A DNA stretch of 16,727 bases from IMGVR_UViG_3300017696_000015:1-16727; one strand, 5' to 3'. Counted from the stretch's first letter, positions 904 to 16,727 are shown. Notes: generated from the letters alone by a model not told the origin. Numbers and translations are program-made.

Positions 904-1037
904 ACATTTTGAAATCAAATTATGACAAATATATACTTATTGTGTAAAATATAATTAGGACAAATTGTAAAGCTAATATACATAATATTGTATATTAGAC
1001 TTGTATTTTATATTAACATTTTGAGAATATTTCAATT

Positions 1038-3662: not shown

Positions 3663-3980
3663 TTATAATTTTTTAACTAAATCTCTTATCAAATTCTTAT
3701 CTGAATTTGTGAGCTTTAATTCTGAATCGTTTAGAATTTTTGTACTTCCCGCCTCTTTTACTAATATCGCTAAATCTCTATGCAATAATCGTGACCTATT
3801 TGGTCTAATGTGATAGAATTCCAAATGTATCGATAGTCTACCAGTTTTCATATTGCATATTGGACATCTGTAATTCTCAAAATGTTTTTCCATATGTCTC
3901 TTAAAACTTCTCTCATTTTCTAATTCTGTTTTGCAAATTGTACAATAAAATCTTTTTGGAATTCCTTTTATAGCTCCCAT
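3663..3980 (-). CDS. Double C2H2 zinc-finger protein (paralog 1, 105 aa)
   Basis: CTIC-x12-HMEKH and CPIC-x9-HLEFYH. Confidence 0.85.
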   Translation of the reverse strand: MGAIKGIPKRFYCTICKTELENERSFKRHMEKHFENYRCPICNMKTGRLSIHLEFYHIRPNRSRLLHRDLAILVKEAGSTKILNDSELKLTNSDKNLIRDLVKKL

Positions 3981-3998
3981 ATTTCATCACTTCCAAAA

Positions 3999-4316
3999 TC
4001 ATAATTTTTTCGAGAAATACCAAATCCTTTCTTTTTCATGTCTTTCTAATTTTATACCCAATTCATTTAAGATTTTTGTACTTCCAGCTTCCTTAACAAG
4101 TATTGCTAAATCTCTGTACAACAATCTTGAACCGTTTGGTTTAATATGGAAAAGTGTAATATGCTTAAACAAATCTCCAGTTGCAAATAGACATAAAGGA
4201 CATCTTATTTTATCGTAATGTTTTTTCATATGTCTCTTAAATTCTTTTGCACTTACAATTACTGTTTTACAGATTGGACAATAATATTCCTTTTTTGTAC
4301 CTTTACCTATTCCCAT
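3999..4316 (-). CDS. Double C2H2 zinc-finger protein (paralog 2, 105 aa)
   Basis: CPIC-x12-HMKKH and CPLC-x9-HITLFH. ATG at 4316 gives the same length as paralog 1 and follows a TTTATAAATGTCAT promoter. Confidence 0.85.
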   Translation of the reverse strand: MGIGKGTKKEYYCPICKTVIVSAKEFKRHMKKHYDKIRCPLCLFATGDLFKHITLFHIKPNGSRLLYRDLAILVKEAGSTKILNELGIKLERHEKERIWYFSKKL

Positions 4317-4370
4317 AAAATATATTATTTTATATGACATTTATAAATATCATTTTACTTTTCGATTTTT

Positions 4371-5378
4371 TTATTCCAGAAATCTTGTATATAGATTATT
4401 AATATCATATTTCTTTGCTAATTCTTTTAAATTCTTACTTCTTTCTTCTCTATCTTGTAATTCTATAGCTATTAATATCGCATTTATCATATCTTGAATA
4501 TCAAACTTGTGAATTCTCCATTTTTGACCTTGAGTTTTGTCATAATATTCCTCGACTTCTGAAGATTTTATCAAAAGATTCCACTGCCATGATGTAAATT
4601 CATCAAATGGGGGCATAAGTTGATGAATAATTGGAGTTCCCATAGCCATACTTTCTAATACTGGCATTCCAAAACCTTCTGTCCCAGACGGAACTATCAT
4701 ATAGTCCATAACTCTATAAAATGCAAAAATATATTCTCTAGGATTTAGCCCAAATTCGCTAACAAAATGTACATTTCCAGGAACTTCCAAATCTTTAAAT
4801 TGTTTATGGGAAATTACAAAAAAGTGAACTTTCTTAGCCAAATCTGGAGCTTTTGTATTTAATTCTTGAAAAACTTTTATCATTAAGTCCATATTTTTTC
4901 TCTTTGTCATTCCTGAAACTATTCCAAATTTCACAGTATTTGGGAAATCTCTTTCTAACTTTTGTTTGAGTTGTGGAGATAATTGTTCTGCTTTTTCTAC
5001 AACTTCAAAATTCACGCCATGAAAAACTGGCAAATCTGTTTCTAGTCCAACTTGTTGTAAATTTTGAGCTGAGAATTTAGAATTTGGAATAAATTTTATG
5101 TCTTTCAACAAATATTGATTTACGATATTTAGATTTGGAATTCCATCACATGTAGTATAGAAATATTTCTTCCCTTTGAATTGATGATAAGCTAGAAGAT
5201 ATGGATTTAATGACGGCGGATGAAATGGAACAAAAATTACAAGTTTTTCAGATTGTGGAATTTGATATGGATTTGTTACAACTGTCACATTTTCTCCATT
5301 TTTCCTCAAAACATAAGCTATATCTTCAGCTACATTTTTTATAGATGAATAATTCATAGTTAAAATTGTGGTTTTCAT
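4371..5378 (-). CDS. GT-B fold (GT4-like) glycosyltransferase, SIRV ORF335 homolog
   Basis: 335 aa with the E-x7-E motif in PSGTEGFGMPVLESMAMGTP. Located next to MCP. Confidence 0.92.
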   Translation of the reverse strand: MKTTILTMNYSSIKNVAEDIAYVLRKNGENVTVVTNPYQIPQSEKLVIFVPFHPPSLNPYLLAYHQFKGKKYFYTTCDGIPNLNIVNQYLLKDIKFIPNSKFSAQNLQQVGLETDLPVFHGVNFEVVEKAEQLSPQLKQKLERDFPNTVKFGIVSGMTKRKNMDLMIKVFQELNTKAPDLAKKVHFFVISHKQFKDLEVPGNVHFVSEFGLNPREYIFAFYRVMDYMIVPSGTEGFGMPVLESMAMGTPIIHQLMPPFDEFTSWQWNLLIKSSEVEEYYDKTQGQKWRIHKFDIQDMINAILIAIELQDREERSKNLKELAKKYDINNLYTRFLE

Positions 5379-7211: not shown

Positions 7212-7256
7212 ATAAAAATATATTTGTCATAAAACGTTTTTTCAAATTGACCAAAT

Positions 7257-9271: not shown

Positions 9272-9431
9272 ATCTTTTTTTCTTTTATCTCTCAATTCTC
9301 AACTCAAATATTTAAAATATAATGTATATTGCTTTTTGTGTTTATAATAAAAATATTGAAAAATATGCTAACTTATAAGTTTGTTAATATTTAAATTTGT
9401 CATAATATAATATTTTTATTAGGGGATGTAA

Positions 9432-11822: not shown

Positions 11823-11917
11823 TATTCCTTATATTATTAATATGACATATTCGTCATGGAAAATGCAAATTTAAAAACCTTTTTATTTGTCATAACACAA
11901 CATTTTTATTGAGAAAT

Positions 11918-12400: not shown

Positions 12401-12412
12401 GGAGTGTTAAAA

Positions 12413-13174
12413 ATGAAAGTTACTTTAGTTTCATATACTCCAGACGGAGAAAAAGTTATTGCAATTGCATCAAAAATGAGTAGGTCAAGAAAAGGATGGG
12501 AATATCATAAAGAAAAAATGACAGATGATGAAATAGAACTATGGATATCTGATGCTATAATTCATGGATATTGGTCTGTACTTGAACACAGTGTATACAC
12601 TTTCTCAATTGAAAGAATTTCTAGAATTGTTTCACATCAACTTGTAAGACATAGAATTGCATCATATACTCAAATGAGCCATAGATTTGCAAAGCCAATT
12701 GAAGAATATTATCAGCCAATTATACCGTCATCTACAGAAAAAAGAGCTAAAGAAATTGTAGAAAAAGCTTATAGCGATTCATATAAACGTTATTATGAAC
12801 TCCTAGAAGCCGGTGTACCAGAAGAAGATGCTCGTTACGTCTTACCAAACGGCATAAATACAAATATTGTCGTTACCATGAATGCTAGAGAACTTTATAA
12901 CTTCTTTGCCTTACGTTTATGTTCTAGAACTCAGTGGGAACTTCGACAATTAGCATGGAAGATGCTCGAAGAAGTGAAGAAAGTACATCCTAGACTATTC
13001 CGTTATGCTGGACCTAATTGTATAATTCATGAGAACTTTATACGTGTCACGCCGATAACTCTTGACTCAATAAACGAGAAGACGGAGTTTATATCGAAAA
13101 GATGTATAGAAGGAGTTCCAAAAGAAGGAATTTATAAATGTATACAAAATTCAAAAAAAGGTGAAGAATTTTGA
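12413..13174 (+). CDS. thyX: Flavin-dependent thymidylate synthase ThyX
   Basis: Signature RHRxxSxxQxSxR ([13 protein letters not shown]), plus [26 protein letters not shown] and QWELR. AGGAG SD before ATG 12413. Confidence 0.96.
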
Positions 13175-13503
13175 AAGTAAAAGATGCAAAAATTCTTTTT
13201 GATTTTCTAAGGAGGAATAATCTACAATTTAGATATTATGAATATAAGAACAATCTATACGATATACATATTACTAATTTGACATTAATTGATTTATCAT
13301 TTTCTGATTTTGATAATCTTGTAGAAATGAATTTTCTGATAAACAATATTGATTTTAAATTTTTACATATCTTAAAAACAAGTTTAGATGTAGAATTTGA
13401 TGTTGGAGATTTACATAATCATGATAAAATAACATTAAAGAAAGTAAGAATAACATGGGATAGAATTCAAGGACTAGAAATTTTATGGGAAAGTAAAAAA
13501 TAA
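13171..13503 (+). CDS. Hypothetical protein, 110 aa
   Basis: TTG start overlapping the thyX stop (TTGA), with an AGGTGA SD. Confidence 0.7.
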
Positions 13504-13521: not shown

Positions 13522-13746
13522 TTATTGTCTTAAATAAACACGTTTTTTCTGTCTCCCAGTTTCTGGATTTATTTCTGTTTTTATAATTATCAATCCTTTC
13601 TTTTCCATATTTTGCAATCTTTTATTTAATATCATGTTATAACGTTTTGCAAAGCTAAAATTATTTATCAAATCTTCTTTCCATACTCCGCAAGGAAATG
13701 TAGATAAATAATTTAAGATTTCTTGTTCCTTTCTTCCTACTCTCAT
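13522..13746 (-). CDS. Winged-helix DNA-binding protein, 74 aa
   Basis: EILNYL...RLQNMEKKGLI...GRQKKRVYL (MarR/PadR-like wing). Confidence 0.8.
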   Translation of the reverse strand: MRVGRKEQEILNYLSTFPCGVWKEDLINNFSFAKRYNMILNKRLQNMEKKGLIIIKTEINPETGRQKKRVYLRQ

Positions 13747-13778
13747 ATTGCCATCAATATATAATATGTATTTTTTTG

Positions 13779-13807
13779 TATTTAAAATTTTCTTTATGAG
13801 TTTACAT
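13779..13807 (-). promoter_or_regulatory. Extended promoter copy 1
   Basis: ATGTAAACTCATAAAGAAAATTTTAAATA, 33 nt upstream of ATG 13746. Confidence 0.65.
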
Positions 13808-13935
13808 TAACATCTTACGTTTTTTAAAATCTCAAATTTTAGGAATAATATAACAAGCAGGAGAAAAATTGAAGAAAAAAATAGAAGGAAAAAGGGGTAA
13901 CCCAAATCAGAAAAATTGAGTAGGAAAAAAAGTGT

Positions 13936-14160
13936 TCAGTCAGAAGATTGCGAATTTTGATGTTTTACAAGAAAAGAAAAATGCATGTTTGCTATATTTT
14001 CATCATATCCTGAAAAGAAAAATATTCTTTTTGATTCTGTCTGTATATATACTGCAATTCTTTGTTTCTGGCAACAATTACACTTTGCATAAATTACATT
14101 ACCCTCTTGTTTTACTTGTACAAAGTTGTGATATGTAACATTTATAACTTGGAATTTCAT
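13936..14160 (-). CDS. Small Cys-containing hypothetical protein (~74 aa), candidate anti-defence protein
   Basis: MKFQVINV...IYAKCNCC. ATG 14160 lies 31 nt after the extended promoter. Confidence 0.7.
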   Translation of the reverse strand: MKFQVINVTYHNFVQVKQEGNVIYAKCNCCQKQRIAVYIQTESKRIFFFSGYDENIANMHFSFLVKHQNSQSSD

Positions 14161-14190
14161 TTTTATCAATTTATATTTACTCAATCTACA

Positions 14191-14219
14191 TTTATAAATT
14201 TTTCGATAAACTTTTACGT
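14191..14219 (-). promoter_or_regulatory. Extended promoter copy 2
   Basis: ACGTAAAAGTTTATCGAAAAATTTATAAA. Confidence 0.72.
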
Positions 14220-14245
14220 ATCGATTTATCGTTTCTATAAAAAAA

Positions 14246-14365
14246 TTAAATTAGTTTGTGATTTATAATATATTCTAGAATCACATATAAAAGAAAACTT
14301 ATTGTAAAATCAATAGAAATTGCACATATTAAATCTCTAATATCTCTCCATGTTTCCCGTTTCAT
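14246..14365 (-). CDS. Small hydrophobic peptide, 39 aa (not in ORF track)
   Basis: MKRETWRDIRDLICAISIDFTISFLLYVILEYIINHKLI*. The ATG abuts the upstream TGA. Confidence 0.5.
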   Translation of the reverse strand: MKRETWRDIRDLICAISIDFTISFLLYVILEYIINHKLI

Positions 14366-14536
14366 TCATCTATCACTTTTTTCATATTTTTTCTTTAACA
14401 TTTTTAACATTTCTTCTTCCTCAATTTTTTTCATTAATTGTCTTAATTGTAAGATGAAATACAGAAATAATGAAAAGAAAAGAACGTCTGTATAAATTAA
14501 AAGTATTTCTATATCTGTTATACTATTAAAACTCAT
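14366..14536 (-). CDS. Small TM + charged-tail protein, 56 aa (not in ORF track)
   Basis: MSFNSITDIEILLIYTDVLFFSLFLYFILQLRQLMKKIEEEEMLKMLKKKYEKSDR*. AGGTGA SD 4 nt upstream. Confidence 0.65.
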   Translation of the reverse strand: MSFNSITDIEILLIYTDVLFFSLFLYFILQLRQLMKKIEEEEMLKMLKKKYEKSDR

Positions 14537-14540
14537 ACTT

Positions 14541-14837
14541 TCACCTTTGATTTTTTAAATTAAAATATAGACTAAGCAATTTCTTAAATACATCTAATCC
14601 GTCTACATCATCTTCAGTAATATACATCACATTTTCCTGATTGTCATCAAAAACTATCTTTAATTTGTACATTTTGTCGTAAAGCAGATATACATTAGCA
14701 AATATGAATTTTAAGTCATTATCTTCTTTAGTAAAACAAGTATCATCTAGTTCATTAACTGAGAAATTTCCTAAAAATAATTCTTTACCTTCTTTTACTT
14801 CTTTTAAAACTTTTTCTATAACTATGTCTTCTGACAT
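14541..14837 (-). CDS. Acidic hypothetical protein (~98 aa)
   Basis: ORF track 14541..14849. ATG 14837 fits the spacing from the TTTTATATTTGTCAT promoter at ~14859-14873. Confidence 0.75.
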   Translation of the reverse strand: MSEDIVIEKVLKEVKEGKELFLGNFSVNELDDTCFTKEDNDLKFIFANVYLLYDKMYKLKIVFDDNQENVMYITEDDVDGLDVFKKLLSLYFNLKNQR

Positions 14838-14929
14838 ATTTAAAAACATTTATCGATTATGACAAATATAAAAATATTACAAATTTACAAATTAAAAAGT
14901 TGTTAAAATAATAGTATTAATATTACAAA

Positions 14930-15021
14930 AATGAGAAAAATTAAAAACAAAAAAAGATAACTGTAGAGTAACAACAAAAAACAAAAACAAAAAGAGAAAA
15001 AGAAAATAAAAAAGAAAAAAA
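14930..15021. repeat. Low-complexity A-tract repeats (T-tracts on the coding minus strand), probable terminator region
   Basis: AAAAAC / AAAAAG units directly downstream of the 90-aa gene. Confidence 0.55.
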
Positions 15022-15294
15022 TTAACTTGAACGTGGAATTAAAAAAGTAATGTAATATTTCCCCTCATATTCTAATATTGCCATTTCTTTAATTTCATTT
15101 AATTTTTTTAAACTTTGAGGATCCTTATAAATGCTAATATTCTGAAAATGGTCACACGCAGAAATTACATACAGCTCGTCTCTTTTTATTTGTCGTAATG
15201 AATACGATTGGTCATTTGTTAATAAAATTGTATCACATTTCTTACATTTTATATATATATTGCTTCCAAATTTTTCTATTTTTATTCCTTCCAT
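15022..15294 (-). CDS. Putative zinc-binding protein (CxxC...CxH), 90 aa, candidate anti-defence protein
   Basis: IKCKKC...SACDHF. Preceded by the extended promoter. Confidence 0.78.
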   Translation of the reverse strand: MEGIKIEKFGSNIYIKCKKCDTILLTNDQSYSLRQIKRDELYVISACDHFQNISIYKDPQSLKKLNEIKEMAILEYEGKYYITFLIPRSS

Positions 15295-15328
15295 ATTTTT
15301 CCCCTTATTTACATTTACTTACTTCACA

Positions 15329-15357
15329 TTTATAAATTTATCTCTATCTTTTTACGT
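15329..15357 (-). promoter_or_regulatory. Extended promoter copy 3
   Basis: ACGTAAAAAGATAGAGATAAATTTATAAA, 35 nt upstream of the ATG. Confidence 0.72.
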
Positions 15358-15404
15358 TTGTATTTTTCGTTTTAACAATTTTCAGAAGTCTTCATAATTT
15401 TATC

Positions 15405-15542
15405 AATAAACAAATAAAAAATAAACAAAAAGCAAAAAACTAAAAAACATAAAAACATAAAAATCAAAAACAAGATAACAAGATTAGAAATTGCAAATTT
15501 GAAAATTATAAATTTGAAATAAAAAATTTAGAATTTAAAAAA
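15405..15542. repeat. Low-complexity A-tract repeats (e.g. AAAAACAT x2, AATTTGAAA x2), probable terminator region
   Basis: Directly downstream of the acrIIIB1-like gene on the minus strand. Confidence 0.55.
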
Positions 15543-16253
15543 TTAATCACTTTTTGAACTTCTAGGACTTGGATGAGTAAATAGATAATATTTATTTGCA
15601 TGTATAGTTATCGTATTAGTTCCATGGTCAAACGATCTCAAAATCACATCTGTATCTTTTGACGGACGGATTATATAAGCAGACCCTGGGCTTGAATATA
15701 TTGATATAATTTGAACTTCATTTGAAAATTCAATTTCATGATTATAGATTTTCATTATAGTGCCGTTTTCTGCATTAAGGTCCACAGTTGTTTTTAAAGG
15801 TGGTATAGAATAAATTTCTAAATGTCCTTGAATAAAGTATAAAGGAAATTCTACTAATTTCCCCTTCTTAAACCTATCATAAAAGTAAAATGTATAATTA
15901 TCATAACTAATCAATAATTCTTGATTTTGTAAATTTGAAGTCTGTATAAATGCCATAATATATTTCTTGTAATCTTGTAAATCTCTGCTAATCTTTTGTC
16001 TACTTGATACTCCGAAAAGCGATGTCACTGATAGATAATATATTCCTCTAGTTTCTACTAATTCTCCATTTTGTAATCTAAAACATCCCTCAAATGTTTT
16101 TCCTGATCTCGAAATATATTTTTTACAGTCAATAAATGAACCTGAAATTGTAGAGATTTTTGTAACTGAATTATTCAAATGCCTTATCATGAAAACATTT
16201 GGAAGATAATTAACTTGTTTAACTACTTTTAATTCATATTTATCTTGACTCAT
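15543..16253 (-). CDS. acrIIIB1: Anti-CRISPR AcrIIIB1 homolog (SIRV2 gp48/ORF249-like), inhibitor of type III-B Cmr
   Basis: Colinear blocks matching the recalled gp48 sequence: LPxVF, C..Y.SRSG.T.EGC, EFPL...QGHL..Y, IYNH...F, S.DH, and C-terminal LFxHPxPR...D. Confidence 0.87.
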   Translation of the reverse strand: MSQDKYELKVVKQVNYLPNVFMIRHLNNSVTKISTISGSFIDCKKYISRSGKTFEGCFRLQNGELVETRGIYYLSVTSLFGVSSRQKISRDLQDYKKYIMAFIQTSNLQNQELLISYDNYTFYFYDRFKKGKLVEFPLYFIQGHLEIYSIPPLKTTVDLNAENGTIMKIYNHEIEFSNEVQIISIYSSPGSAYIIRPSKDTDVILRSFDHGTNTITIHANKYYLFTHPSPRSSKSD

Positions 16254-16438
16254 TTTTTTTCCTCCTCCTAAAATATCATATCCCTTATGACAAATATAAA
16301 GCTTTTTTTATCTCTTTATCTACAATTTCTCTCTCCTTTGTATTTTTATCTGTAGAATGAGAAAAATTGTCCATAGTCTTGGCTAAACTGGAAAATAAAA
16401 AAAGAAAAATTGTGACTTTGCAGAATTAGAAGAAAAAA

Positions 16439-16615
16439 TCAACAATCGCTTAAATATTCTATAACTTTCTTTTTAGAAAGATGCAGAGCTTCCGCAATTT
16501 CTTCAATAGAATGACCGTCCTTATATGCCCTCTTGACAGCACTGATAACGTCGTCTCTATTTGCTATCCAGTACTGTGTTCTTCCAATTTTTACAATTCT
16601 TTTGGGATTGTACAT
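16439..16615 (-). CDS. HTH DNA-binding protein, SIRV gp1 (ORF56a/83a)-like, 58 aa (not in ORF track)
   Basis: MYNPKRIVKIGRTQYWIANRDDVISAVKRAYKDGHSIEEIAEALHLSKRKVIEYLSDC*, with HTH GxSIEEIAEALxLSxRKV and a GAGGAG SD. Confidence 0.85.
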   Translation of the reverse strand: MYNPKRIVKIGRTQYWIANRDDVISAVKRAYKDGHSIEEIAEALHLSKKKVIEYLSDC

Positions 16616-16650
16616 TTTTTTCTCCTCAATATCATTTATGTATCTTTTCC

Positions 16651-16679
16651 TTTATAAATTTTTCTTTATGCTTTTACAT
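16651..16679 (-). promoter_or_regulatory. Extended promoter copy 4
   Basis: ATGTAAAAGCATAAAGAAAAATTTATAAA, 36 nt upstream of ATG 16615. Confidence 0.72.
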
Positions 16680-16727
16680 CTCTATCTCTCGTTATTTTTA
16701 TCGTTATTGACGTTAATGAACAATTTA

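What the first reader, a model, noticed from the sequence alone, without database searches (positions are those of the whole stretch)
13522..16679. Anti-defence island: a shared 29-bp extended promoter flags orphan genes around acrIIIB1 as candidate new anti-CRISPR/anti-defence proteins
Seen: four minus-strand genes each have an ungapped motif, approximately AYGTAAAA-NN-WTADMGAWAAWTTTWWAWA, 31-36 nt before the ATG. The copies are at 13779-13807, 14191-14219, 15329-15357 and 16651-16679. The genes are the 74-aa wHTH, the 74-aa Cys protein, the 90-aa Zn protein and the 58-aa HTH. The conserved AYGTAAA block lies well upstream of BRE-TATA. Each gene is a stand-alone cassette followed by long T-tracts. 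Known: rudiviral acr genes cluster near genome ends under strong early promoters, and shared promoters have been used to find archaeal anti-defence genes. Inference: these are immediate-early host-takeover genes, and the two Cys-containing orphans are the best candidates for undescribed inhibitors.
Basis: partly seen in the sequence, partly recalled or inferred. Interest (0 to 1): 0.82.

Follow-up and report, generated by a model that had tools for sequence, protein, structure and literature searches.

The report
Known rudivirus early anti-defence promoter regulon
The repeated promoter is real, but it is the already published early "anti-defence" promoter of Sulfolobus rod-shaped viruses, here in an uncultivated relative; three of the four genes it drives belong to catalogued families, and only the 90-aa zinc-type protein is a new candidate family.

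Summary
Observation confirmed. The four minus-strand copies sit exactly where stated: 5 matches against 0.04 expected, the fifth a weak match inside a gene. The conserved unit is longer than reported, at least 45 nt, with an AACG..A.AT block upstream and an AT-rich block downstream.

It is not new. The same architecture precedes aca8, acrID1, acrIA3 and acrIIIB1 in SIRV2, and anti-defence gene (ADG) families in SIRV7-10. This is the Aca8-associated early regulatory sequence of Bhoobalan-Chitty et al. 2024 (PMC11065993).

The window is a whole metagenomic contig of an Usarudivirus-like rudivirus.

Gene identities:
- 58-aa HTH = Aca8, the presumed regulator.
- 74-aa wHTH = ADG.02, a MarR-like regulator.
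- 74-aa Cys protein = ADG.08, predicted but untested.
- 236 aa = AcrIIIB1 homolog.
- 102 aa = ADG.07, and 56 aa = pADG.02.
- The 90-aa protein is absent from isolate genomes, PHROGs and Pfam.

The 90-aa protein founds a family seen only in metagenomes, with at least 13 loci, 12 of them behind an early promoter. It has an invariant CxxC...CxH signature and is distantly related to SIRV2 gp04.

acrIIIB1 and the ADG.07 operon do not carry the motif. They use the core-gene promoter type, TATA followed by TGTCATA.

Verdict: a new member of a known kind. Interest is low to moderate and rests on the 90-aa family.

The parts
16651..16695 (-). Early regulatory unit in front of aca8: AACG..A.AT block, AYGTAAAA block, purine-rich BRE and TATA box (TTTATAAA).
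   Evidence: 58.2 bits. The distal part is near-identical to the SIRV2 gp01 promoter. In the strain variant L008, 8 substitutions fall in 16669-16688, none at a position invariant among the four copies.
16439..16615 (-). aca8 homolog: a 58-aa HTH protein, the presumed autoregulator and repressor of the early regulon.
   Evidence: tblastn to SIRV2 gp01/gp54 (E 1.8e-9) and to the Usarudivirus Aca8 genes. PDB 2X48 (CAG38821, listed as Aca8 in the paper's Supplementary Data 1), E 8.5e-7 over residues 5-58. PHROG 7067, E 5.8e-16.
16286..16300 (-). Promoter of acrIIIB1: TATA box followed by TGTCATA (the core-gene type), preceded by a purine-rich BRE. There is no AYGTAAAA block.
   Evidence: Exact match to TTTATAWWTGTCATA. 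The same promoter type is conserved before acrIIIB1 orthologs of the Usarudivirus relatives.
15543..16253 (-). AcrIIIB1 homolog, 236 aa.
   Evidence: 48% identity to SIRV10 gp45 (listed as AcrIIIB1 in Supplementary Data 1) and 31% (E 1.9e-30) to SIRV2 gp48. PHROG 6092, E 1e-70.
15329..15373 (-). Early regulatory unit in front of the 90-aa gene.
   Evidence: 53.6 bits.
15022..15294 (-). 90-aa protein with an invariant CxxC...CxH signature (C17, C20, C47, H49). It is the founding member of a family seen only in metagenomes, and the one new candidate early or anti-defence gene.
   Evidence: No Pfam or PHROG match. No tblastn hit in 50,697 phage and archaeal-virus records. Homologs P0002-P0006. 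AlphaFold2 pLDDT 84. No PDB structural neighbour. Best BFVD hits are small rudiviral proteins with TM about 0.6. hhalign to SIRV2 gp04: 74%, E 2.8e-5.
14858..14872 (-). Core-type promoter (TATA + TGTCATA) of the ADG.07 operon.
   Evidence: Exact match. The same type is seen in the closest metagenomic relatives, whereas ADG.07 orthologs in other rudiviral records (SIRV10 among them) carry the early motif.
14541..14849 (-). ADG.07 homolog, 102 aa. The true start may be Met5 at 14837.
   Evidence: tblastn to SIRV10 gp01 and SIRV9 gp04, which are listed as ADG.07. PHROG 15508, E 1.6e-13.
14366..14536 (-). pADG.02 homolog: a 56-aa membrane-type protein, co-transcribed.
   Evidence: 51% identity to SIRV7 gp51, listed as pADG.02. 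4-nt gap to the gene upstream and no T-run between them.
14246..14365 (-). Uncalled 38-aa hydrophobic ORF, the third gene of the operon.
   Evidence: Conserved at 69-95% aa identity at the same place in four other metagenomic contigs. A T7 run follows 4 nt after its stop codon.
14191..14235 (-). Early regulatory unit in front of the 74-aa Cys gene.
   Evidence: 52.7 bits.
13936..14160 (-). ADG.08 homolog: 74 aa, with the Cys cluster KCNCC.
   Evidence: 48% identity to SIRV10 gp48, SIRV9 gp02 and SIRV8 gp04, all listed as ADG.08. PHROG 27628, E 4e-18. It shares only the N-terminal hairpin and CxxC with the 90-aa family.
13779..13823 (-). Early regulatory unit in front of the wHTH gene. It carries a second CGTAA copy 14 nt upstream of ATGTAAAC.
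   Evidence: 47.4 bits. The tandem CGTAA arrangement is conserved in most ADG.02 promoters listed.
13522..13746 (-). ADG.02 homolog: a 74-aa MarR-like winged-helix regulator.
   Evidence: 50-58% identity to SIRV7 gp03, SIRV10 gp05 and SIRV9 gp09. Listed as ADG.02, 'putative transcriptional regulator (MarR...)'. PHROG 9113, E 1e-32.

Best explanation
The region is the terminal early-gene (anti-defence) island of an uncultivated Usarudivirus-like rudivirus. The repeated sequence is that virus's version of the Aca8-associated early regulatory sequence described for SIRV2 and its relatives.

Proposed mechanism:
- A very strong purine-rich BRE and TATA box recruit host TFB, TBP and RNA polymerase as soon as the genome enters. 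This fires four short single-gene units, each ended by T-tract terminators.
- The virus-specific flanks are the likely operator through which the virus's own small HTH protein Aca8 later shuts the regulon down. These flanks are the AACG..A.AT and AYGTAAAA blocks upstream of the BRE and an AT-rich block over the start site. Aca8 is itself transcribed from such a promoter.
- The products are two regulators (Aca8, and ADG.02 wHTH) and two small Cys proteins (ADG.08, and a new 90-aa CxxC...CxH family) that are candidate inhibitors of host defence.
- The AcrIIIB1 homolog and the ADG.07 operon lie in the same island but are driven by the general rudiviral TATA-TGTCATA promoter.

What is shown and what is inferred:
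- Shown here: the motif, its restriction to these genes, its identity with the SIRV2 and Usarudivirus motif, and the gene family assignments.
- Inferred from the literature: early timing, Aca8 binding and anti-defence function.
For: Motif statistics:
- 5 matches against 0.04 expected.
- Position weight matrix scores of 47-58 bits against 3.1 for the next best site in the window.

Identity with the published motif:
- The same 29-nt architecture at the same 30-35 nt distance precedes SIRV2 gp01/gp54 (aca8), gp02/gp53 (acrID1), gp07, gp47 and gp48 (acrIIIB1). It also precedes ADG.02, ADG.04 and ADG.06 genes of SIRV7-10.
- These are the genes the paper lists as early or anti-defence.

Restriction to rudiviruses:
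- A 37-nt degenerate pattern hit 38 stretches among 2.9 million viral contigs. Contig lengths identify the SIRV isolate records (32,735 nt = SIRV10, 35,450 nt = SIRV2) and the window's own 16,727-nt contig. Homologs of the window's proteins turned up in many of the other stretches; I did not verify every one.
- The pattern hit no Sulfolobales chromosome among 185,579 species genomes. Eleven of the 12 hits there are SIRV2-like contaminant contigs in bacterial assemblies.

Block conservation without requiring the block:
- When anchoring on BRE/TATA alone, 100 of 135 distinct promoter segments in the fetched loci carry ANRTAAA at -21.

Constraint on the conserved positions:
- A 99.6%-identical strain variant has 8 substitutions in the aca8 promoter, all at positions that are not invariant among the four copies.

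Aca8 rather than ADG.02:
- SIRV2 has the block and Aca8 but no ADG.02 homolog.

Gene assignments.

90-aa family: 12 of 13 loci carry an early BRE/TATA promoter at the same distance.
Against: - No transcription data exist for this virus, so 'early' is an analogy.
- Aca8 binding to the sequence is described only as 'likely' in the source paper. I found no paper reporting a binding test.
- A block upstream of the BRE is, from general knowledge of archaeal promoters, a more typical place for an activator than for a repressor.
- In Usarudivirus aca8 promoters the block reads AAGATAAAA or AAGGTAAAA rather than AYGTAAAA. Only TAAAA is general, which is weak for a specific operator.
- None of ADG.02, ADG.07, ADG.08 or the 90-aa family has been tested for anti-defence activity.
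- The loci used for the wider consensus were fetched with a pattern that contains the block, so at least one promoter per locus is biased by how it was found.
Confidence: 0.8

Rival explanations
1. The AYGTAAAA and AACG blocks are binding sites for a host transcription factor, or a UP-like element that strengthens TFB/TBP recruitment. Immediate-early firing would then need no viral protein, and Aca8 would act elsewhere, for example on the block over the start site.
For: The block lies directly upstream of the BRE, where archaeal activators usually act (general knowledge, and my recollection of the host factor Sta1 activating SIRV1 promoters; not checked here). Immediate-early genes must be read by host factors alone. 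The paper notes that the core promoter is shared with highly expressed host genes and subtype I-A cas genes. A conserved block also exists downstream of the TATA box. In some relatives this block is a perfect inverted repeat, TTACAT-AA-ATGTAA (L011 and L050), which is a more classical repressor position.
Against: The extended pattern has no match in any Sulfolobales chromosome. The paper reports that viruses without Aca8 have different flanks around the same BRE/TATA. The downstream inverted repeat is degenerate in the window itself.
Confidence: 0.15
2. The long similarity is kept mainly by recombination or gene conversion between promoter copies, that is, a spreading promoter cassette. Selection for a regulator site beyond BRE/TATA would play little part.
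For: The strain variant L008 differs from the window by a patch of 8 changes in 20 nt in the aca8 promoter. The new version shares a 16-nt string with the ADG.08 promoter of the same genome. Orthologous genes swap promoter class between viruses: ADG.07 and acrIIIB1 carry the early motif in some genomes and the TGTCATA type in others.
Against: The same positions are conserved between this virus and SIRV2, whose flanking DNA is only about 65% identical or unalignable. Conversion within one genome cannot explain conservation across genera, and all 8 variant positions avoid the invariant columns.
Confidence: 0.05
3. The small Cys proteins, especially the 90-aa CxxC...CxH family, are not defence inhibitors. 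They would be nucleic-acid-binding zinc-ribbon regulators or host-takeover factors, like the two HTH proteins under the same promoter.
For: Two of the four motif genes are DNA-binding regulators. A CxxC...CxH knuckle pair is typical of small zinc ribbons, which often bind nucleic acid or protein partners (general knowledge). The paper itself annotates some ADG families with 'host cell cycle regulation?' and notes that false positives are possible. The distant relative SIRV2 gp04 is not under an early promoter.
Against: Family turnover and patchy distribution resemble anti-defence genes: the family is absent from all isolates and present in many metagenomic relatives. One sister branch has lost a zinc ligand. 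The predicted fold has no neighbour among solved structures, including solved DNA-binding zinc ribbons.
Confidence: 0.3

Closest known systems
Aca8-associated early (anti-defence) regulatory sequence of SIRV2 and other Aca8-carrying rudiviruses (Bhoobalan-Chitty et al., Nat Commun 2024, PMC11065993)
   Same: Purine-rich BRE plus TTTAWAWA TATA box, with the AYGTAAAA block 14-21 nt upstream of the TATA box. It sits 30-35 nt before the ATG of single small genes at a genome end, and it is present before aca8 itself. Near-identical strings precede SIRV2 gp01, gp02, gp07, gp47 and gp48.
   Different: The virus-specific details differ: the TATA box reads TTTATAAA, an AACG block is invariant upstream, and the downstream block differs from the AGTTT of SIRV2 and the Usarudiviruses. 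Here acrIIIB1 and ADG.07 are not under this motif.
Bacteriophage acr-aca operons (an HTH Aca repressing a strong acr promoter)
   Same: The logic is the same: a strong early promoter for counter-defence genes and a small HTH protein encoded with them and expressed from the same promoter class.
   Different: This is a dispersed regulon of monocistronic cassettes, each with its own copy of the promoter and T-tract terminator, rather than one operon. The promoter is of the archaeal BRE/TATA type. Operator and repression are not demonstrated.
SIRV2 gp04 (ORF90) with its SIRV1 88-aa homolog, and ADG.12 (SIRV8 gp60 / SIRV9 gp56)
   Same: These are small (75-90 aa) rudiviral terminal-region proteins with CxxC...CxH[F/Y] and a C-terminal KYY-like strand. 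hhalign of the 90-aa family against gp04 gives 74%, E 2.8e-5. Foldseek gives TM 0.60 to the SIRV1 protein and 0.62 to a 75-aa SIRV9 protein.
   Different: Identity is only 19-21% in a multiple alignment. hhalign to ADG.12 is insignificant. gp04 has a TGTCA-type promoter rather than an early one. I could not tell which of the two 75-aa SIRV9 proteins the Foldseek hit is.
General rudiviral promoter with a GTC element after the TATA box (reported for SIRV1/2 transcription; recalled from the literature, not checked here)
   Same: TTTATAWWTGTCATA occurs 19 times against 2.0 expected, in front of many core genes and of acrIIIB1 and the ADG.07 operon.
   Different: It lacks the AYGTAAAA and AACG blocks. 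This class serves as the contrast showing that the early motif is not the virus's generic promoter.

Membership tests
Aca8-associated early/ADG regulatory sequence (PMC11065993) | Predicted strong promoter: purine-rich BRE directly upstream of a TTTAWATA-type TATA box | tested here: met
   All four copies have RAGAWAAW followed by TTTATAAA or TTTAAATA.
Aca8-associated early/ADG regulatory sequence (PMC11065993) | A regulatory sequence around the promoter is shared by several single genes of the same viral genome | tested here: met
   Four copies are conserved over at least 45 nt. Position weight matrix scores are 47-58 bits against 3.1 for the next best site.
Aca8-associated early/ADG regulatory sequence (PMC11065993) | aca8 itself is preceded by the virus-specific sequence (motif prevalence 1 for aca8) | tested here: met
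   Copy at 16651-16695, 35 nt before the aca8 ATG. Prevalence statement.
Aca8-associated early/ADG regulatory sequence (PMC11065993) | Sequence-level identity with the SIRV2 and Usarudivirus motif | tested here: met
   The same 29-mer architecture and spacing are found in SIRV2 and SIRV7-10.
Aca8-associated early/ADG regulatory sequence (PMC11065993) | Genes are transcribed immediately after infection and repressed later | not testable with these tools
   The virus is uncultivated and comes from a metagenome (JGI 3300017696). No transcriptome is available.
Aca8 | About 55-aa HTH protein homologous to SIRV2 gp01/gp54 (short form) and SIRV1 CAG38821 | tested here: met
   tblastn E 1.8e-9 to SIRV2. 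PDB 2X48 E 8.5e-7, full length. C-terminal ...YLSDC as in the listed Aca8 sequences.
Aca8 | Binds and represses the early promoters | not testable with these tools
   This is only proposed in the source paper.
AcrIIIB1 | Sequence homology to SIRV2 gp48 | tested here: met
   31% identity over 254 columns, E 1.9e-30. 48% identity to SIRV10 gp45, which is listed as AcrIIIB1.
AcrIIIB1 | Inhibits type III-B (and, per a 2024 preprint, I-A) CRISPR interference | not testable with these tools
   Function is known for SIRV2 gp48 only (abstracts).
ADG.08 | Homology to SIRV10 gp48, SIRV9 gp02 and SIRV8 gp04 | tested here: met
   48% identity over 65 aa, E 6e-16. Family listing. KCNCC is conserved.
ADG.02 | Homology to SIRV10 gp05 and SIRV7 gp03 (MarR-like wHTH) | tested here: met
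   51-58% identity, full length. Listing.
ADG.12 / SIRV2 gp04 small zinc-type proteins (for the 90-aa protein) | Significant sequence or profile similarity | tested here: inconclusive
   gp04: hhalign 74%, E 2.8e-5 over 46 columns including both metal knuckles. ADG.12: probability 1.5%. Foldseek TM about 0.6, E 1.5e-4.
ADG.12 / SIRV2 gp04 small zinc-type proteins (for the 90-aa protein) | CxxC...CxH[F/Y] ligand pattern | tested here: met
   C17, C20, C47 and H49 are invariant in 6 homologs. The same pattern is in gp04, its SIRV1 homolog and SIRV9 gp56. Metal binding itself was not tested.

The most novel reading that the evidence does not exclude
The 90-aa CxxC...CxH protein (15022-15294) founds a previously uncatalogued family of early rudiviral proteins, known only from metagenomes so far. 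Almost all members (12 of 13 loci) sit behind an early anti-defence promoter, and the predicted fold has no solved structural neighbour. On this reading it is a new zinc-dependent inhibitor of an archaeal defence system (CRISPR type I or III, or a toxin-antitoxin system). Together with SIRV2 gp04, ADG.12 and an 84-aa branch, it would define a fast-evolving superfamily of such inhibitors.
Probability: 0.3. Interest if true: 0.5.

Novelty: new member of a known kind. Interest (0 to 1): 0.3.

Why it matters
The motif and the idea of using it to find anti-defence genes are already published, so the main finding adds little. It is another uncultivated rudivirus whose terminal island follows the known plan.

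Modest added value:
- The promoter-guided approach carries over to metagenomic contigs. It yields one gene family, the 90-aa CxxC...CxH protein, that isolate-based catalogues could not contain.
- The conserved unit, the AYGTAAAA block and its AACG companion are delimited precisely. A natural strain variant changes only the degenerate positions, which gives a ready-made design for operator mutagenesis.
- Orthologous anti-defence genes (acrIIIB1, ADG.07) switch between the early promoter and the generic TATA-TGTCATA promoter in different viruses. Promoter-based prediction will therefore miss some true anti-defence genes, and timing may be tuned lineage by lineage.

Tried and rejected
- Pfam gave nothing above cut-off for any of the small proteins except weak HTH hits for the 58-aa protein.
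- tblastn of the 90-aa protein against 50,697 phage and archaeal-virus records found nothing credible: two hits from human faecal phages at E 3-9.
- Foldseek against the PDB found nothing for the 90-aa model (best E 0.34, TM at most 0.34). Sequence searches of the PDB found nothing for AcrIIIB1, ADG.02 or the 90-aa family.
- I considered that ADG.08 might be AcrIIIB2, because two members are tagged 'ADG/Acr'. I rejected this because AcrIIIB2 is a SIRV3 gene. In the paper's comparison table ADG.08 is only 'AcrNET 0/1, DeepAcr unknown subtype'; I did not find what the tag itself means.
- I considered that the two C2H2 zinc-finger ORFs at 3663-4340 might be ADG.04 with a weak motif (2.7-bit site at 4332-4376). 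I rejected this because they are homologs of the gene beside the glycosyltransferase in SIRV7-10, and their promoter is the TGTCATA type.
- A literature search for 'Aca8' alone was swamped by the plant calcium pump ACA8. The narrowed search gave three papers, none reporting a binding test as far as titles and abstracts show.
- A search of the paper's supplements for the CxHF strings of the 90-aa family found nothing. Most entries there are accession numbers without sequence, so this is weak evidence of absence.
- A downstream inverted repeat, TTACAT-AA-ATGTAA, whose half-site equals the upstream block, is perfect in relatives (L011, L050). It is degenerate in the window's own copies, so I do not build on it.
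- The first structure model, from 2 sequences, was poor (pLDDT 67) and was not used.

Full report
**What is in the sequence.** The region 13.5-16.7 kb carries eight minus-strand ORFs separated by long T-rich spacers. The fifth is a 3-mismatch match inside the 466-aa ORF. The distance from motif end to ATG is 30-35 nt. A position weight matrix from the four copies scores them 47-58 bits, with leave-one-out scores of 19-42. The next best site anywhere in the 16.7-kb window scores 3.1.

**The unit is longer than reported.** All four copies also share AACG 12-16 nt and A.AT 5-8 nt upstream of AYGTAAAA. They share an AT-rich block between the TATA box and the ribosome-binding site as well. An alignment with three promoters from another metagenome has 31 invariant columns in 99.

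**Provenance.** The window is a complete 16,727-nt contig of JGI metagenome 3300017696, which is also IMG/VR UViG 3300017696_000015. Its core is about 79% identical in DNA to Usarudivirus SIRV5 and SIRV7. The terminal region reaches only about 65% identity to any SIRV. Flipped, the window's right end corresponds to a genome terminus, and the minus-strand genes point inward.

**A strain variant.** A second contig of the same sample (L008) is 99.6% identical over 5.3 kb and extends 101 nt further. Eight of its 21 differences fall within 16669-16688, in the distal half of the aca8 promoter. Seven hit positions that are fully degenerate among the four copies, one hits a 3-of-4 position, and none hits an invariant one. 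By my own count, the chance that all 8 would avoid the 9 invariant positions of that 20-nt tract is C(11,8)/C(20,8), about 0.001. The new version shares a 16-nt string with the ADG.08 promoter, which suggests exchange between promoter copies.

**What the motif is.** A relaxed pattern (AYGTAA[A/G], a 10-18 nt gap, then the TATA box) was run on five reference rudiviruses.
- In SIRV2 it finds the same architecture at the same distance before gp01/gp54, gp02/gp53, gp07, gp47 and gp48.
- In SIRV7-10 it finds it before the homologs of the window's wHTH gene and a few other small genes.
- The window's aca8 promoter and that of SIRV2 gp01 share a near-identical distal string ending in ATGTAAAA.

This is the consensus regulatory sequence of Bhoobalan-Chitty et al. 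2024 (PMC11065993). The paper describes a strong BRE/TATA promoter with conserved flanks before 11 of 13 SIRV2 early genes, including aca8, acrID1 and acrIIIB1. It used this sequence to predict 354 anti-defence genes (ADGs), and it proposes Aca8 as the repressor.

**Distribution of the motif.**
- A 37-nt degenerate version that includes the upstream A.AT matched 38 stretches among 2.9 million viral contigs. Contig lengths identify the SIRV isolate records and the window's own contig. Homologs of the window's proteins were found in many of the remaining stretches, though I did not verify every one.
- The pattern matched no Sulfolobales chromosome among 185,579 species genomes. Eleven of the 12 hits there are SIRV2-like contigs in assemblies of unrelated bacteria, that is, contamination.
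- Anchoring on BRE/TATA alone, 100 of 135 distinct promoter segments in the fetched loci have ANRTAAA at -21. These loci were fetched with a pattern containing the block, so the figure is partly biased.

**Gene identities.** Homologs were found by tblastn against SIRV2, 7, 8, 9 and 10 and looked up in the paper's Supplementary Data 1.

| ORF | Coordinates (-) | Assignment | Main evidence |
|---|---|---|---|
| 58-aa HTH | 16439-16615 | Aca8 | Full-length match to PDB 2X48 (SIRV1 CAG38821), E 8.5e-7 |
| 236 aa | 15543-16253 | AcrIIIB1 homolog | 48% identity to SIRV10 gp45; 31%, E 2e-30, to SIRV2 gp48 |
| 74-aa wHTH | 13522-13746 | ADG.02 | Annotated in the paper as a MarR-like regulator |
| 74-aa Cys protein | 13936-14160 | ADG.08 | 48% identity to SIRV10 gp48 |
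| 102 aa | 14541-14849 | ADG.07 | Homologs SIRV10 gp01, SIRV9 gp04 |
| 56-aa membrane protein | 14366-14536 | pADG.02 | 51% identity to SIRV7 gp51 |

- ADG.08 and ADG.07 are machine-learning 'possible Acr, unknown subtype' in the paper's table and are untested.
- The 102-aa, 56-aa and an uncalled 38-aa hydrophobic ORF (14246-14365) form one operon with no T-run inside. The 38-aa ORF is conserved in four other contigs.

So three of the four motif-bearing genes, and everything else in the island, belong to catalogued families. Two of the four are regulators rather than inhibitors.

**The exception: the 90-aa protein (15022-15294).**
- It has no Pfam or PHROG match and no tblastn match in the phage and archaeal-virus collection.
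- The 5.8-billion-protein word search found one 64%-identical relative.
- A profile search of 1.84 billion representatives found four more small proteins at 32-42% identity.
- C17, C20, C47 and H49 are invariant (CxxC...CxH).
- In all fetched DNA the family occurs at 13 or more distinct loci from several hot-spring metagenomes. Twelve carry an early-type BRE/TATA promoter at the same distance. Some have AYGTAAAA and some have other virus-specific blocks, such as AAGTAGAAAG.
- An AlphaFold2 model from six sequences is confident (pLDDT 84, pTM 0.71).
- The model has no neighbour among solved structures (best E 0.34).
- Its three best matches among predicted viral structures are small rudiviral proteins, with TM 0.59-0.62 and E 1.5e-4 to 7.6e-4.
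- One of these is the 88-aa SIRV1 homolog of SIRV2 gp04/ORF90 (my assignment, from its length and organism). That protein shares KCxxC, CxHF and a KYY strand, and hhalign gives 74%, E 2.8e-5.
- SIRV9 gp56 (ADG.12) has the same ligand pattern, but its profile score is insignificant.
- An 84-aa family found behind the motif in IMG/VR contigs aligns over its full length (65%, E 6e-5). It has lost one Cys.
- ADG.08 shares only the N-terminal hairpin and CxxC.

**Second promoter class.** acrIIIB1 and the ADG.07 operon lack the AYGTAAAA block. Both carry TTTATATTTGTCATA.
- This TATA-TGTCATA pattern occurs 19 times with up to 2 mismatches, against 2.0 expected. By my reading of the coordinates, most sites lie just upstream of core genes on both strands.
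- acrIIIB1 orthologs of the Usarudivirus relatives share this promoter type, whereas SIRV2 gp48 has the early motif.
- ADG.07 orthologs in other rudiviral records (SIRV10 among them) have the early motif, whereas those in this virus and its nearest relatives have the TGTCATA type.

Promoter class is therefore exchanged between orthologs.

**Mechanism, and how sure I am.**
- Shown here: the motif and its restriction to these four genes, its identity with the published regulon, the cassette structure with T-tract terminators, and the family assignments.
- Inferred from SIRV2: immediate-early transcription from the strong BRE/TATA by host TBP, TFB and RNA polymerase, followed by shut-off by Aca8.
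- Aca8 is a better candidate than ADG.02 for reading the upstream block, because SIRV2 has the block and Aca8 but no ADG.02 homolog.
- Absence of the extended motif from host chromosomes favours a viral factor over a host one.
- The position upstream of the BRE and the looser TAAAA core in Usarudivirus aca8 promoters keep the host-activator rival alive.
- Anti-defence activity of ADG.08 and the 90-aa family is a prediction only.

**Verdict.** It is wrong that the genes are orphans and that both Cys proteins are undescribed. What remains of value is the 90-aa family, the precise delimitation of the conserved blocks with a natural variant, and promoter-class swapping between orthologs.

Noticed in passing
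L014-L018 and L020-L025 (genome-contig hits): Assemblies of unrelated bacteria contain contigs 70-93% identical to SIRV2, one of them 31,951 nt long. The assemblies are JCM strains of Aliiglaciecola litoralis, Aquimarina litoralis, Halomonas salifodinae, Gaetbulibacter jejuensis and Planomonospora alba, plus Streptomyces gamaensis CGMCC. These look like rudivirus contamination of the bacterial assemblies.
   Followed up: partly
window 14246-14365 (-): An uncalled 38-aa hydrophobic ORF directly follows the 56-aa gene. It is conserved at 69-95% aa identity at the same position in four other metagenomic contigs. It is probably the third gene of the ADG.07 operon.
   Followed up: partly
window, 19 sites, e.g. 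921-935(-), 7217-7231(+), 9390-9404(+), 11880-11894(+), 14858-14872(-), 16286-16300(-): A second promoter type, a TATA box followed by TGTCATA, occurs 19 times against 2.0 expected. It lies before core genes and before acrIIIB1 and the ADG.07 operon. Orthologs of ADG.07 and acrIIIB1 in other rudiviruses carry the early motif instead.
   Followed up: partly
window 16669-16688, 15758-15806 and 12592-12694, compared with L008: The 21 differences from a 99.6%-identical co-occurring strain are clustered. There are 8 in the aca8 promoter's degenerate positions and 6 in acrIIIB1, giving I150V, A161T, T165I and I166V. A further 6 lie in thyX, and 1 in ADG.07 gives D83G.
   Followed up: partly
window 12404-13174 (+) and 13171-13503 (+): A ThyX (Thy1, PF02511) gene and an overlapping 110-aa ORF with no Pfam or PHROG match have no counterpart in SIRV2, 7, 8, 9 or 10. 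They sit between the conserved core and the early-gene island.
   Followed up: no
window 15404-15541 and 14973-15021: The spacers after acrIIIB1 and the 90-aa gene are arrays of short T-rich units on the coding strand, for example about 9 copies of a 7-8-nt unit. They carry up to nine runs of 5 or more T in 90 nt, far more than one terminator needs.
   Followed up: no
L011 and L050 (promoters of 90-aa homologs): Between the TATA box and the ATG some relatives carry a perfect inverted repeat, TTACAT-AA-ATGTAA, whose half-site equals the upstream ATGTAA block. The repeat is degenerate in the window's own copies.
   Followed up: partly
L019 (MAG 'archaeon isolate S141', contig JALTZZ010000080.1): This is the only non-contaminant hit of the extended motif in the genome collection. 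It has no nucleotide similarity to SIRVs at E 1e-10, and I did not examine it further.
   Followed up: no
SIRV10, SIRV7, SIRV2, SIRV8 and SIRV9 RefSeq records (L001-L005): Aca8 homologs are annotated as 'terminase small subunit' in RefSeq and in PHROG 7067. This is a mis-annotation of a 55-aa HTH protein from a virus group that has no terminase.
   Followed up: no
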